Of a stretch of 64,000 nt of DNA, positions 35,085-46,278 are shown one piece after another. A program made the translations under genes and the position numbers. The stretch comes from Bacillus subtilis subsp. subtilis str. 168 (GTDB lineage: Bacteria; Bacillota; Bacilli; Bacillales; Bacillaceae). The notes beneath the pieces are model-generated. The model had not been told where the DNA came from. It made no database searches and worked only from the letters and a program-made list of their open reading frames with translations. Location: assembly GCF_000009045.1 (NCBI RefSeq), contig NC_000964.3, positions 1,488,001 through 1,552,000 on the forward strand, given 5' to 3'. Numbering within the stretch: position 1 is the first letter of the stretch; every line of letters begins with the position of its first letter.

Positions 35085-35119
35085 AAAGAGGCACTCCCTT
35101 AGGGAGTGCCTCTTTTTTT
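35083..35119. terminator. Bidirectional terminator between adeC and rnjA
   Basis: AAAAAGAGGCACTCCC/GGGAGTGCCTCTTTTT, 16-bp stem. Confidence 0.9.
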
Positions 35120-36785
35120 AAACCTCCATAATGATCGGCAGGATCATTGGACGGCGCTTTGTTTTTTCGTACAAGAAAGGTGCAAGCGTGTCTGTAATTT
35201 CGTTTTTGATTTCAGACCATTGAGTCGTTTTTCGTTCCATTACTTTTTGTAAGTGATTTGAAATGAGCTCTTGAGCGTCGTTGATCAAGTCACCAGATTC
35301 TCTCATGTACACAAATCCTCTGGAAATCAAATCAGGACCCGCTGAAATCTTGAAGTCGTCCATGTCAATGCTGACAACAACGATGACAAGTCCTTCTTCA
35401 GAGAGAATTCTGCGATCACGAAGTACGATATTGCCAATATCACCGATACCGCTTCCGTCAATGTACACTGAACCGGACGGGATTTTTCCTGCAACTGAAG
35501 CCTCATCGCCTTTAAGTGCTAATACTTCACCATTATCCATGATAAAGCAGTTTTCCTCTGGGATGCCACAATCTGTTGCAAGTTTGACATGCATCTTTTG
35601 CATTCTGTACTCACCGTGAATCGGCATGAAGAATTTAGGCTTGATTAAACGAAGCATCAGCTTCTGTTCTTCCTGTCCGCCGTGACCGGATGTATGGATA
35701 TCGTTAAGAGGGCCGTGAATAACCTCAGCACCCGCACGATACAGCTGGTTGATTGTTCGACTCACGCTGATTGTGTTGCCTGGGATAGGGGATGAAGAAA
35801 ATACGACTGTATCCCCAGGATTGATTGAAATTTGGCGGTGTGTGCCGTTTGCAATTCTTGATAACGCCGCCATTGGTTCCCCTTGGCTTCCTGTACATAA
35901 AATTGTTACTTTATTAGCAGGCATACGATTGATTTCGTTATGCTCAATAAACGTATTTTTAGGACAGTTAATATAACCGAGTGTCTGTCCAATTTCGATA
36001 GCCGATTCCATACTGCGTCCAAATACGGCAACTTTTCTTCCATTTTGTACAGCAGCTTCAATTACCTGCTGCAAGCGGTGAATATTCGACGCAAATGTGG
36101 CGAAGATAATTCGGCCGTCCACCTTGCGGAAAATGTCATGAATGCTTTCTCCTACACGGCGCTCAGACATGGTAAACTCCGGATTTTCACTGTTTGTGCT
36201 GTCTGAAAGAAGGCACAAAACGCCTTCTTTACCGATTTCGGCCATTTTCGTTAAGTTTGCCGGCTCGCCGACTGGAGTAAAGTCGAATTTGAAATCCCCA
36301 GTATGTACGATGTTTCCGGGCGGCGTTTTTACAACAATGCCGTAGGAATCCGGAATACTGTGTGTTGTTCTGAAGAATGACACAGCCGTTTTGCGGAACT
36401 TTACAATATCATCCTCGCCGATAATGTTCAGTTTCGTCTGTCTCAATAATCCATGCTCTTCAAGTTTATTCCGAAGTAAGCCGATCGCGAGTTTTCCGCC
36501 GTATACAGGAATATTCACTTGTCTGAGCAGGTATGGAATACCGCCGATGTGGTCTTCGTGCCCGTGGGTGATAAAAAGCCCTTTAATTTTATCTTCGTTT
36601 TTGACTAAATACGTATAATCAGGGATGACGTAGTCAATTCCGAGCAGTTCGTCCTCGGGAAACTTGATCCCCGCATCAATCAGTACAATTTCATCCTGGA
36701 ATTGCACCGCGTACGTATTTTTACCGATTTCGCCCAAACCTCCGAGGGCGAAAACAGCAGTCTGATCATTTTTTACAAATTTCAT
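35118..36785 (-). CDS. rnjA: Ribonuclease J1
   Basis: [28 protein letters not shown] and HTSGHG motifs. Confidence 0.97.
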
Positions 36786-36790
36786 ACCGC

Positions 36791-37000
36791 TCATAACTCC
36801 AATACTTTAAAATTTTCGCTCTGTTGTTCATATTCTAAGAATGCACCATCAACAGGTGTAATAAACTCAATATTAAATTTCTTTTCTTTCAGCTTTGTTC
36901 TGACGTCACGCTCAGATACGCCTTCAATATAAAGTGAATCTGTCTTTTCCCGAACAGGTACTTCGTCAGCCTTCTCTTGATAAAATACCTTATAAATCAT
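36791..37000 (-). CDS. rpoY: RNA polymerase epsilon subunit
   Basis: MIYKVFYQE...[10 protein letters not shown]; SD AGGAGAG; co-transcribed with rnjA. Confidence 0.93.
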
Positions 37001-37044
37001 TCCAAATCTCTCCTTAAATGCCGTATGTTAGACTCGCTCATTCT

Positions 37045-37073
37045 ATTATATTCGAAAACGGAATATAAGGAAA
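37045..37073 (-). promoter_or_regulatory. Putative SigA promoter of rpoY-rnjA
   Basis: Minus strand TTTCCT-N17-TATAAT. Confidence 0.55.
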
Positions 37074-37082
37074 GCCTTGAGC

Positions 37083-37114
37083 AAAATAAGGATCTCTCAA
37101 AAAGTGAAAGATCC
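37083..37114 (-). terminator. Minus-strand intrinsic terminator after the 23-aa ORF
   Basis: RNA GGAUCUUUCA-CUUUU-UGAGAGAUCC followed by UUAUUUU; contains a U:G pair that would be a mismatch on the plus strand. Confidence 0.7.
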
Positions 37115-37118
37115 CTTG

Positions 37119-37190
37119 TCAGGCAATTGCTTTCTTACGGAGCATTCCGTTCCATTGTCTTCTGAGTTTCTTTCTTAATTTACGCAGCAT
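37119..37190 (-). CDS. Candidate 23-aa basic peptide MLRKLRKKLRRQWNGMLRKKAIA
   Basis: Hand-translated; SD AAAGGAGG 9 nt upstream; own terminator; below the ORF-track length cutoff. Confidence 0.65.
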   Translation of the reverse strand: MLRKLRKKLRRQWNGMLRKKAIA

Positions 37191-37385
37191 TAGCCAGTCC
37201 CTCCTTTAATGAAAAATTTGTCCCAGAGTTCTTTTATACAAATAGTATACGGAGATTGAGGAAGACTTTTCGTGGTTATTAATGGAATTTAATATGATTT
37301 TTGAACGAAATTGTTTGCTGAATGACAATCTTTTTGTATGATGAGGGTGGGAATTGCAGACCAAGACGATAAAGGGGAAGTTGCG

Positions 37386-38159
37386 ATGGATTCTAAATTA
37401 ATCTTTTTTGATATTGACGGCACAATATATGATCATGATAAGAATATACCGGAAAGTACGAGAAAAACCGTGGCGGAGCTTCAGCGCCAAGGGCATCATG
37501 TGTTTATTGCCAGCGGCCGGTCTCCATTTTTGGTTAAGCCGATTTTGGAGGAGCTGGGCATCCACTCATTTATTTCCTACAATGGACAGTTTGTTGTCTT
37601 TGAAAATCAAGTGATTTATAAAAATCCGCTGCCTGAAAATGCAATCAGGCGATTATTAAAGCAGGCGGATGAAGGCAAGCATCCTGTTGTGTTTATGGCT
37701 GAGGACACGATGAAAGCGACTGTTGCGGATCACCCCCATGTTCTCGAGGGAATCGGCAGCCTTAAAACAGATTATCCAGAGACCGATGACCTTTTTTATG
37801 AAGGAAAAGAAATTTTTCAGCTTCTTTTATTTTGTCAGGATGAAGAAGAAAAAGCTTATGCCGCTTTTCCTGAGTTTGATCTAGTTCGCTGGCATGAGCT
37901 ATCGACTGATGTTCTGCCGCACGGAGGTTCGAAGGCAGAAGGAATCAAAAAAGTGATTGAGCGTCTTCCGTTTGATATCGGCGATACATATGCTTTCGGC
38001 GACGGATTAAATGATTTGCAAATGATTGAATACGTTGGGACAGGCGTTGCTATGGGAAATGCTGTTCCCGAACTGAAAGAAATCGCGGACTTTGTAACAA
38101 AACCGGTGGACGAGGATGGAATTGCATACGCTGTCAAAGAATTGGGCCTTTTAAAATAA
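37386..38159 (+). CDS. ykrA: Cof-type HAD phosphatase
   Basis: FFDIDGT, SGR, GSKAEG and FGDGLND motifs. Confidence 0.9.
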   Translation: MDSKLIFFDIDGTIYDHDKNIPESTRKTVAELQRQGHHVFIASGRSPFLVKPILEELGIHSFISYNGQFVVFENQVIYKNPLPENAIRRLLKQADEGKHPVVFMAEDTMKATVADHPHVLEGIGSLKTDYPETDDLFYEGKEIFQLLLFCQDEEEKAYAAFPEFDLVRWHELSTDVLPHGGSKAEGIKKVIERLPFDIGDTYAFGDGLNDLQMIEYVGTGVAMGNAVPELKEIADFVTKPVDEDGIAYAVKELGLLK

Positions 38160-38161
38160 AG

Positions 38162-38189
38162 AAACGGCTGGCATTGTGCCAGCCGTTTT
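38162..38189. terminator. Bidirectional terminator between ykrA and defB
   Basis: AAACGGCTGGCA/TGCCAGCCGTTT. Confidence 0.85.
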
Positions 38190-38194
38190 CTCTT

Positions 38195-38749
38195 TTAGCG
38201 CTCAATTGCGATTGCATTTTCAGGTTCTTTGAAAGGATTTTCCTTATCAATATGATCATAGAACATAACGCCGTTCAAATGATCGATCTCATGCTGAAAC
38301 ACAATAGCCGGAAATCCTTTTAAACGAATATCAATATTTTCGCCTTCTAGTGTTGTTCCTTTTACTCTGATGCGAGCATAGCGGGGAACATAACCGGGAA
38401 TCGCTTCATCCACAGAGAGGCAGCCCTCGCCGCTTGTTAAGTAGCTTTTTTCAACTGAATGGCTGACGATCTTAGGATTAAACAGAGCATAGCTGTATAA
38501 TTTACCGGAAGCATCTTCCGCATGAACGGCGATCATTCGTTTTTTGATATTAATTTGAGGAGCTGCGAGTCCTACGCCAGGGCGCAGCTTGTATTTTTCG
38601 GCTAATTCTGGATTTTGGCTGTTTTTAACAAATTCGATCATGTCGGCCAGCTGCTGTTTTTCTGCATCAGTTGGAGGCAGCTCAACAGGTTCGGCAGTCT
38701 CTCTGAGGGCTGGATGGCCGTCACGTACGATGTTTTCCATAGTAATCAA
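38195..38749 (-). CDS. defB: Peptide deformylase
   Basis: [14 protein letters not shown] and HEIDH motifs. Confidence 0.96.
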
Positions 38750-38858: not shown

Positions 38859-39017
38859 TTAGCAACAGCCTCCACCTAAATAAGCAGCTCCGACAATGAT
38901 TAACAGAATGAATAAAACAACGATTAGCGCAAAGGTGCGGCCGTAGCCATATCCGCAGCCACCATATCCGTAACCACCATAACTGCAGCAGCCTCCGCCG
39001 TAACCATATCCATACAT
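38859..39017 (-). CDS. ykzV: 52-aa YjcZ/SscA-family sporulation peptide
   Basis: Hand-translated [52 protein letters not shown]; SD GAGGAGG; symbol from recall. Confidence 0.85.
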
Positions 39018-46063: not shown

Positions 46064-46119
46064 AATAACAACAAAAGAAATTAAGCGTTTTCAAATTTCA
46101 AAGAAATGGGGAATAAGAG

Positions 46120-46239
46120 ATGGGTACGATTGTTTGCCAAGATTGCAACGAAGCCATTCATTACTTTGAAGATGAGAAAGTGACAACATTATATGGAACT
46201 TGCTGCGGACAATGTCAATGTCCTGTTGATGAAGAGTAA
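46120..46239 (+). CDS. ykzW: SR1P, 39-aa GapA-binding peptide
   Basis: Hand-translated MGTIVCQDCNEAIHYFEDEKVTTLYGTCCGQCQCPVDEE. Confidence 0.92.
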   Translation: MGTIVCQDCNEAIHYFEDEKVTTLYGTCCGQCQCPVDEE

Positions 46240-46273
46240 AAAAAAGCATGCGGCTTAAAGCCGCATGCTTTTT
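46238..46273. terminator. Bidirectional terminator between SR1 and speA
   Basis: AAAAAGCATGCGGC/GCCGCATGCTTTTT. Confidence 0.9.
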
Positions 46274-46278
46274 ATTTT

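What the first reader, a model, noticed from the sequence alone, without database searches (positions are those of the whole stretch)
37083..37207. Self-contained 23-aa cationic amphipathic ORF directly upstream of rpoY-rnjA
Seen: on the minus strand, a perfect SD (AAAGGAGG, 9-nt spacing) precedes ATG 37190 and encodes MLRKLRKKLRRQWNGMLRKKAIA. It has 10 K/R and no acidic residues, hydrophobic residues on one helical face (L2, L5, L9, W13, M16), and an internal MLRK repeat also visible in DNA. A strand-specific terminator follows 4 nt after the stop, and then the rpoY promoter. I do not recall it in the standard annotation, though I cannot verify that. Inference: a small nucleic-acid- or membrane-binding peptide, or a leader peptide whose translation tunes read-through into the RNAP-epsilon/RNase J1 operon.
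Basis: partly seen in the sequence, partly recalled or inferred. Interest (0 to 1): 0.72.

Follow-up and report, generated by a model that had tools for sequence, protein, structure and literature searches.

The report
Conserved unannotated 23-residue basic microprotein gene
A 23-codon reading frame just upstream of the genes for the RNA polymerase epsilon subunit and RNase J1 in Bacillus subtilis is a real protein-coding gene, kept under purifying selection across many families of Bacillales, missing from standard annotation, and of unknown function.

Summary
The Shine-Dalgarno (SD) site, the ATG at 37190, the 23-aa peptide MLRKLRKKLRRQWNGMLRKKAIA, the hairpin with T-run just after the stop, and a TTTCCT-N17-TATAAT rpoY promoter are all present.

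The ORF is far beyond chance. An orthologue lies on the same strand just upstream of rpoY in 58 of 62 Bacillales loci, whatever gene lies further upstream. It is absent from 18 Lactobacillales loci. dN/dS is about 0.1 in the sense frame only. All 56 ORFs tabulated have an SD-type core within 22 nt of the start codon. The conserved core is an amphipathic helix.

The ORF has its own conserved promoter-like motif (CCAyGAAAA-N17-TATAcTA). In 34 of 56 cases it has its own terminator. A promoter of the same unusual type lies between it and rpoY. I therefore read it as a separate small gene encoding a trans-acting basic microprotein, not a leader peptide.

It matches nothing in Pfam, NCBIfam, Rfam or PDB. 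Only a few genomes annotate it, as "hypothetical" or "uncharacterized conserved protein". I found no paper on it.

Function is inferred only. Published Term-seq tables show no 3' end at its terminator, so expression in B. subtilis is unproven.

The parts
37243..37288 (-). Promoter-like motif of the small gene: ATTCCATTAATAA-CCACGAAAA (-35-like ACGAAA, 37273-37268), an 18-nt spacer, then TATACT(A) (-10-like, 37249-37244).
   Evidence: The motif ttCCAnnTTTAnCCAyGAAAA-N17-TATAcTA lies 31-84 nt upstream of the ORF start (43-52 nt in most of the subtilis group) in about 40 of 56 cases, including loci where ykrA is not the neighbour. No transcription start site has been measured.
37200..37207 (-). 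Shine-Dalgarno site AAAGGAGG, 9 nt before the ATG.
   Evidence: All 56 ORFs tabulated have an SD-type core within 22 nt of the start codon; in 54 it ends 6-11 nt before the start codon.
37119..37190 (-). 23-codon ORF (ATG to TGA) encoding MLRKLRKKLRRQWNGMLRKKAIA.
   Evidence: Orthologues in 58 of 62 Bacillales loci. dN/dS is 0.09-0.12 in this frame, 0.25-0.29 in the antisense frame that shares wobble positions, and 0.7-2 in the other frames. Helix predicted for residues 2-20.
37081..37116 (-). Intrinsic-terminator-like hairpin (37116-37088) with a U-rich tail.
   Evidence: A hairpin plus T tail starts within 40 nt of the stop in 34 of 56 orthologous loci (within 14 nt in 33 of them), against 11 of 280 shuffles. 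Stem sequences differ between lineages. No Term-seq 3' end is reported here.
37045..37073 (-). rpoY promoter: TTTCCT-N17-TATAAT.
   Evidence: It is nearly invariant in the subtilis group. In most other lineages the same position carries CATGAAAA-N17-TATAATA.
36791..37000 (-). rpoY (ykzG), the RNA polymerase epsilon subunit.
   Evidence: Pfam PF07288, E = 1e-30.
35118..36794 (-). rnjA, RNase J1. Its start overlaps the rpoY stop.
   Evidence: Pfam RNase_J_b_CASP, RNase_J_C and Lactamase_B.

Best explanation
This is an independent small gene. It is probably transcribed from its own sigma-A-type promoter with a non-canonical -35 box, translated from a strong SD, and in most lineages ended by its own terminator.

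Its product is a 23-residue peptide with net charge about +8 to +10. The peptide is predicted to form one amphipathic alpha-helix, with hydrophobic residues at positions 2, 5, 9, 13, 16 and 17 and Lys/Arg elsewhere.

Shown here: coding selection, translation signals, gene order, and promoter and terminator motifs.

Inferred: the peptide acts in trans by docking its narrow hydrophobic stripe on a partner while its basic face contacts an anionic surface. The most likely partners are RNA or the RNA machinery encoded next door (RNA polymerase with the acidic epsilon subunit, RNase J1, or the ribosome). The shared promoter type would keep it co-expressed with rpoY-rnjA.
For: - Orthologues lie on the same strand upstream of rpoY in 58 of 62 Bacillales loci. 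The upstream neighbour may be ykrA (divergent), defB (co-directional) or another gene.
- An HMM of the peptide finds only this site in each roughly 5-kb locus and in the 64-kb window (E = 1e-9 to 1e-12).
- dN/dS is 0.09-0.12 in the sense frame only. Leu, Arg and Ser codons switch codon families, and Lys/Arg exchanges are common.
- An SD-type core lies within 22 nt of the start in 56 of 56 ORFs. The start codon is ATG in 52 and TTG in 4.
- A terminator follows in 34 of 56 cases, against 4% of shuffles.
- The motif ATGAAA-N17/18-TATAAT occurs 39 times in 408 kb, and 37 of those lie within 600 nt upstream of rpoY. They mark both the small ORF and rpoY.
- The peptide is amphipathic, and AlphaFold2 predicts a helix for residues 2-20 with pLDDT 78-88.
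- A profile search of 1.84 billion proteins returns only 20 hits, all orthologues or mis-called versions. It is therefore a stand-alone family and not a fragment of a larger protein.
- RpoY has a net charge of -4.
Against: - There is no direct evidence of a transcript, translation or a partner.
- The Term-seq tables of Mandell et al. 2021 (PMC8060035) list no minus-strand 3' end between 1524882 and 1526156. The predicted terminator is at about 1525081. Weak ends inside rnjA were listed. So the terminated transcript is rare in those cultures, or the terminator is leaky, or a roughly 155-nt RNA was lost in library preparation.
- No solved B. subtilis ribosome or RNA polymerase structure contains this chain.
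- In 22 of 56 ORFs no terminator separates it from rpoY, so co-transcription is possible there.
Confidence: 0.55

Rival explanations
1. Cis-acting leader peptide. A ribosome translating or pausing at the end of the ORF masks the 5' arm of the hairpin that begins 2-3 nt after the stop. Transcription from the upstream promoter then reads through into rpoY-rnjA.
For: - The stop-to-hairpin gap is 0-9 nt in 29 of the 34 loci that have a hairpin.
- The ORF always sits directly upstream of rpoY.
- No Term-seq 3' end is seen at the hairpin in B. subtilis, which is compatible with read-through.
- The whole 23-aa peptide would still be inside the exit tunnel at termination, as with TnaC (established knowledge).
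Against: - A conserved promoter lies between the hairpin and rpoY.
- No alternative antiterminator pairing is seen.
- The gap is 13-14 nt in Geobacillus and Parageobacillus, and 22 of 56 ORFs lack a hairpin.
- Conservation is strongest at the N-terminus, while the C-terminus and the Trp-to-stop distance vary (10, 13 or 19 residues).
- Amphipathic periodicity is conserved, which an arrest peptide does not need.
Confidence: 0.2
2. Peripheral membrane-binding peptide. The amphipathic cationic helix lies on anionic phospholipid, like membrane-targeting helices or SpoVM. It localises or modulates a membrane-associated process.
For: High hydrophobic moment, net charge +6 to +10, and a conserved Trp at the polar/apolar boundary.
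Against: - The hydrophobic face is narrow, and mean hydrophobicity is very low (-0.3 to -0.5 on the Eisenberg scale).
- There is no genomic link to membrane functions. The only constant neighbours are rpoY and rnjA.
Confidence: 0.15
3. Not a protein. The element is a small non-coding RNA or a chance ORF, and its conservation reflects RNA or DNA constraints.
For: No Ribo-seq or proteomic evidence was found. The antisense frame -2 is open in 41 of 52 unique sequences.
Against: - Third codon positions vary most (column entropy 29.3, against 16.7 and 11.7 for positions 1 and 2).
- dN/dS is lowest in the sense frame.
- The start, SD and stop are conserved while the flanks cannot be aligned between families.
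- No Rfam family matches, and there is no significant fold (z = -1.5).
Confidence: 0.04

Closest known systems
Fur-regulated small basic proteins FbpA/FbpB/FbpC of B. subtilis (FbpC is 29 aa; proposed RNA chaperones acting with the FsrA sRNA). From my own knowledge, Gaballa et al. 2008.
   Same: Very small, highly basic cytosolic peptides of B. subtilis, encoded by tiny transcripts that look like sRNAs, with a presumed RNA-related role.
   Different: No sequence similarity. This gene shows no sign of Fur control, is much more widely conserved, and is fixed next to rpoY-rnjA.
Lineage-specific basic ribosomal microproteins (bL36, bL34; mycobacterial bL37 of 24 aa and bS22). From my own knowledge.
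   Same: Size of 23-45 aa, extreme basicity, housekeeping-type genomic context, and missed by gene callers.
   Different: No match to any PDB chain. No extra density of this kind has been assigned in B. subtilis ribosome structures. Ribosome association was not tested.
Arginine-rich-motif RNA-binding peptides (lambda N residues 1-22, HIV Rev ARM). From my own knowledge.
   Same: A basic helix of about 20 residues with a single conserved Trp. In lambda N, the Trp stacks on an RNA loop and links RNA to RNA polymerase.
   Different: Here the helix has a clear hydrophobic stripe. No cognate RNA hairpin was identified, and there is no homology.
Leader or arrest peptides that control downstream transcription (TnaC of 24 aa; the bmrB leader of bmrCD, PMC4191407).
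   Same: Length, position upstream of an operon, and a stop codon next to a termination signal.
   Different: There is an intervening promoter, a variable or absent terminator, and conservation at the N-terminus rather than the C-terminus.
SR1P (ykzW, 39 aa), encoded by the SR1 sRNA in the same window (46070-46274). It modulates GapA and RNase J1 (PMC8152036).
   Same: A B. subtilis microprotein from an sRNA-sized transcript, tied to RNA decay.
   Different: Unrelated sequence. SR1P is not highly basic, and its link to RNase J1 is biochemical, not syntenic.

Membership tests
Bona fide protein-coding small gene (microprotein) | Purifying selection on the encoded amino acids in one frame | tested here: met
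   dN/dS is 0.12 in the subtilis group and 0.09 in Geobacillus/Anoxybacillus in frame +1. Other frames give 0.25-2.0.
Bona fide protein-coding small gene (microprotein) | Conserved start codon, SD and stop across species | tested here: met
   56 of 56 have an SD-type core within 22 nt; in 54 it ends 6-11 nt before the start codon. 52 start with ATG and 4 with TTG. Length is 23 aa in 44 of 56.
Bona fide protein-coding small gene (microprotein) | Evidence of translation (Ribo-seq, mass spectrometry or a tag) | not testable with these tools
   No dataset was reachable. No hit in the papers or supplements searched.
Transcription-attenuation leader peptide | The ORF and the regulated gene share one promoter, and the terminator lies in the 5' leader | tested here: not met
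   A conserved promoter (TTTCCT or CATGAAAA-N17-TATAAT) lies between the terminator and rpoY in most lineages. An added contribution from read-through is not excluded.
Transcription-attenuation leader peptide | Alternative antiterminator/terminator pairings coupled to ribosome position | tested here: not met
   No sequence complementary to the 5' arm of the hairpin lies in or before the ORF. The gap is 0-14 nt and the hairpin is absent in 22 of 56.
Ribosome arrest peptide (TnaC/SecM/MifM type) | Conserved residues close to the peptidyl-transferase centre (C-terminal) at a fixed distance from the stall site | tested here: not met
   C-terminal sequence and length vary (-RKKSIA, -LPKNLYA, -QRVPML, -PKYSIE, and longer tails). 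The distance from Trp13 to the stop is 10-19 residues.
Cationic amphipathic alpha-helical peptide | Helix with a segregated hydrophobic face and a high net positive charge | tested here: met
   Hydrophobic moment 0.6-0.75, against about 0.3 for shuffles, in the main group. Net charge +6 to +10. AlphaFold2 predicts a helix for residues 2-20.
Type I toxin or hydrophobic small membrane protein | A hydrophobic transmembrane stretch and an antisense RNA partner | tested here: not met
   No hydrophobic stretch; mean hydrophobicity is negative. No antisense promoter or terminator pair was found.
Known protein, RNA or structure families | Significant match to Pfam, NCBIfam, Rfam or PDB | tested here: not met

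The most novel reading that the evidence does not exclude
The peptide is an unrecognised accessory subunit or regulator of the Bacillales RNA machinery. It would bind RNA polymerase (near epsilon), RNase J1/J2 or the ribosome. It would be co-expressed with rpoY-rnjA through a shared, unusual -35 element (CATGAAAA) that defines a small, previously unnoticed regulon.
Probability: 0.2. Interest if true: 0.85.

Novelty: new member of a known kind. Interest (0 to 1): 0.66.

Why it matters
B. subtilis 168 is the reference Gram-positive genome. Yet a gene conserved across Bacillaceae, Anoxybacillaceae and related families, with dN/dS of about 0.1, is missing from its annotation and from Pfam and NCBIfam.

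Its fixed position beside the genes for RNA polymerase epsilon and RNase J1 makes it a concrete candidate for a missing partner. The role of epsilon is still unclear, and RNase J1 is the main 5'-3' exoribonuclease. The promoter type it shares with rpoY adds to that case.

The question is directly testable in a laboratory strain with a start-codon mutant, a tag and a pull-down. The case also shows that sRNA-sized transcripts in Firmicutes may hide conserved microproteins.

Tried and rejected
- Exact look-ups of the B. subtilis peptide and nine orthologues found only the B. licheniformis WX-02 entry.
- Pfam, NCBIfam, Rfam and PDB gave nothing.
- Text searches found nothing on this ORF. They covered the peptide sequence, ykzG/ykrA, Ribo-seq small-ORF studies of B. 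subtilis, and segments S528-S530.
- The key paper on the ykzG promoter (Jamalli et al. 2014, PMC3911265) is not held. I could not check which promoter they mapped.
- The tiling-array supplements of Durand 2012 and Laalami 2013 list no new segment at 1525000-1525299. Segments S528-S530 are missing from those tables, so this is inconclusive.
- I considered an SD-sequestering 5' UTR stem (UUUACUU pairing with AAGUAAGG) in the Geobacillus and Robertmurraya lineages. The energies are weak, and the same bases could equally be a second promoter (TTTACT-N16-TACAAT). I left this open.
- I considered sigma-G/F, sigma-W and Spo0A readings of the CCAyGAAAA ... TATACTA motif and dropped them. The same motif drives housekeeping rpoY in other genera, and the diagnostic bases are not conserved.
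- The antisense frame -2 is often open. That is a by-product of the Lys/Arg codon composition.

Full report
**1. The observation.** Coordinates of ykzG and ykrA in published tables show that the window is B. subtilis 168 with an offset of 1,488,000. On the minus strand:
- AAAGGAGG is at 37207-37200, followed by 9 nt and the ATG at 37190.
- The ORF ends with TGA at 37121-37119 and encodes MLRKLRKKLRRQWNGMLRKKAIA. It has 10 Lys/Arg and no acidic residue.
- A strand-specific hairpin lies at 37116-37088 (12 pairs) with tail ATTTTG, beginning 2-3 nt after the stop.
- TTTCCT-N17-TATAAT lies at 37073-37045, in front of rpoY, whose ATG is at 37000.
- rnjA follows, overlapping the rpoY stop.

Pfam confirms RpoY, RNase J1, the HAD phosphatase YkrA and the deformylase DefB as neighbours.

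**2. More than chance.** I fetched 80 rpoY loci from one genome per species.
- A homologous ORF lies on the rpoY strand, 179-464 nt before the rpoY ATG, in 58 of 62 Bacillales loci. The genera include the Bacillus subtilis group, Metabacillus, Geobacillus, Parageobacillus, Anoxybacillus, Robertmurraya, Rossellomorea, B. methanolicus, Halalkalibacterium, Evansella, Alteribacillus, Guptibacillus, Pseudalkalibacillus, Lentibacillus, Calidifontibacillus and Bhargavaea.
- It is absent from Sporolactobacillus, Marinococcus, Salsuginibacillus and all 18 Lactobacillales loci.
- An HMM of the peptide finds no other site in any locus or in the 64-kb window.
- The gene further upstream varies: ykrA divergent, defB co-directional, or others. 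The ORF stays with rpoY in every case.
- The consensus is MLKKLKKKLxxQWKDLLRKKSIA. The core M-Φ-[KR]-[KR]-Φ-[KR]-x-[KRQ]-Φ-x3-[WCML]-[KRN]-x-Φ-Φ (Φ = hydrophobic) is shared by all, and the C-terminus varies.

**3. Coding.**
- Nei-Gojobori dN/dS is 0.12 in the subtilis group and 0.09 in Geobacillus/Anoxybacillus.
- By frame: +1 gives 0.09-0.12. The antisense frame that shares wobble positions gives 0.25-0.29. All other frames give 0.7-2.0.
- Third codon positions carry most of the variation. Leu, Arg and Ser switch codon families.
- All 56 tabulated ORFs have an SD-type core within 22 nt; in 54 it ends 6-11 nt before the start codon. The start is ATG in 52 and TTG in 4.
- Flanking sequence cannot be aligned between families, while the peptide is kept.

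**4. Transcription signals.**
- *Upstream of the ORF.* A motif ttCCAnnTTTAnCCAyGAAAA-N17-TATAcTA lies 31-84 nt before the start in about 40 cases, including loci that lack ykrA. In the window it is CCACGAAAA (37275-37267) and TATACTA (37249-37243).
- *Downstream of the ORF.* A hairpin plus T tail starts within 40 nt of the stop in 34 of 56 loci (within 14 nt in 33), against 11 of 280 shuffles. Stem sequences are lineage-specific.
- *Between the hairpin and rpoY.* Most lineages carry CATGAAAA-N17-TATAATA. Of 39 matches to ATG[ACT]A[AT]-N17/18-TATA[AC]T in 408 kb on both strands, 37 lie within 600 nt upstream of rpoY.
- *Implication.* The ORF and rpoY therefore have tandem promoters of one unusual type. 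From memory, the abstract of Jamalli et al. 2014 reports a sigma-A promoter with a non-canonical -35 box for ykzG. I could not read that paper.

**5. The product.**
- Net charge is +6 to +10.
- The helical hydrophobic moment of residues 1-18 is 0.6-0.75, against about 0.3 for shuffles, in the main group.
- AlphaFold2 on the 32-aa Lentibacillus orthologue, using the family alignment, gives a helix for residues 2-20 with pLDDT 78-88 and a disordered tail.
- RpoY has a net charge of -4.

**6. Known or not.**
- There is no Pfam, NCBIfam, Rfam or PDB match.
- The exact B. subtilis peptide is not among 15 billion proteins.
- A profile search of 1.84 billion representative proteins gives 20 hits. All are orthologues, N-terminally over-extended calls or read-through variants.
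- Names on record are "hypothetical protein" (B. licheniformis WX-02 AKQ72807.1; a 39-aa extended call in B. subtilis; Sediminibacillus) and "Uncharacterized conserved protein" (Anoxybacillus flavithermus WK1 ACJ34258.1).
- No paper in the library mentions the sequence or an ORF here.

**7. Expression evidence.** I found none in favour. The Term-seq tables of Mandell et al. 2021 list rnjA+36 (100% termination) and def+39, but no minus-strand 3' end near 1525081. Possible reasons are low expression in those cultures, a leaky terminator, or loss of a roughly 155-nt RNA. The tiling-array tables I could reach lack segments S528-S530, so they are uninformative.

**8. Interpretation.**
- *Best supported (0.55):* an independent microprotein gene whose basic amphipathic helix acts in trans on an anionic partner. 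Given the synteny and the shared promoter type, that partner is probably RNA or the RNA polymerase / RNase J1 / ribosome machinery. The partner is inference only.
- *Leader peptide (0.2):* weakened by the intervening promoter, the variable or missing hairpin, the lack of an antiterminator, and N-terminal rather than C-terminal conservation.
- *Membrane binding (0.15):* fits the helix but not the genomic context or the very low hydrophobicity.
- *Non-coding or chance (0.04):* contradicted by the frame-specific selection.

**9. Verdict.** It is a new, essentially unannotated and uncharacterised microprotein family of Bacillales. As a kind of thing, a small basic protein, it is known. Its function and its link to rpoY-rnjA are open and easy to test.

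Noticed in passing
window 37045-37073 and 37243-37275; loci L017-L060 within 600 nt upstream of rpoY: The small ORF and rpoY carry tandem promoters with the same non-canonical -35 element (CATGAAAA-N17-TATAATA). 37 of 39 matches in 408 kb lie upstream of rpoY. In B. subtilis itself the rpoY copy has TTTCCT instead.
   Followed up: partly
window 37001-37040 (minus strand): The rpoY 5' UTR (GAGTCTAACATACGGCATTTAAGGAGAGATTTGG) is almost invariant across the subtilis group and is recognisable in Metabacillus. That is far more conserved than a plain leader needs to be, so it may be a regulatory or processing site.
   Followed up: no
window 46070-46274 (+): Rfam's SR1 sRNA family (RF02376, 237 bits). 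This is the dual-function RNA that encodes SR1P (ykzW), a microprotein reported to affect RNase J1 through GapA.
   Followed up: no
window 38859-39017 (minus strand): A 52-aa Gly/Tyr/Cys-rich ORF with a C-terminal hydrophobic segment matches Pfam YjcZ_2 (PF09680, E = 2e-13). This exact sequence, from this start codon, is not in the protein collection.
   Followed up: partly
window 38150-38200: A single bidirectional terminator hairpin is shared by the convergent genes ykrA and defB. It appears in published Term-seq tables as def+39 (about 91-96% termination) and ykrA+34 (about 71-78% in the first two columns).
   Followed up: no
L021, L022, L023, L034 (Robertmurraya, B. methanolicus), about 150-290 nt upstream of rpoY: In these genera the rpoY promoter motif lies 150-290 nt before rpoY. 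That leaves a long 5' UTR with no Rfam match, which the subtilis group does not have.
   Followed up: no
L017-L039, 20-50 nt upstream of the small ORF: A conserved TTTACTTT...GACAAG...TAcAAT block lies just before the SD. It could be a second promoter or an SD-sequestering stem (UUUACUU pairing with AAGUAAGG). This is unresolved.
   Followed up: partly
window 37338-37385 (+): The longest ORF for ykrA starts at 37338. However, the HAD motif, the published annotation (1525386) and the orthologues all point to the ATG at 37386. The intergenic region that holds both divergent promoters is therefore 195 nt.
   Followed up: yes
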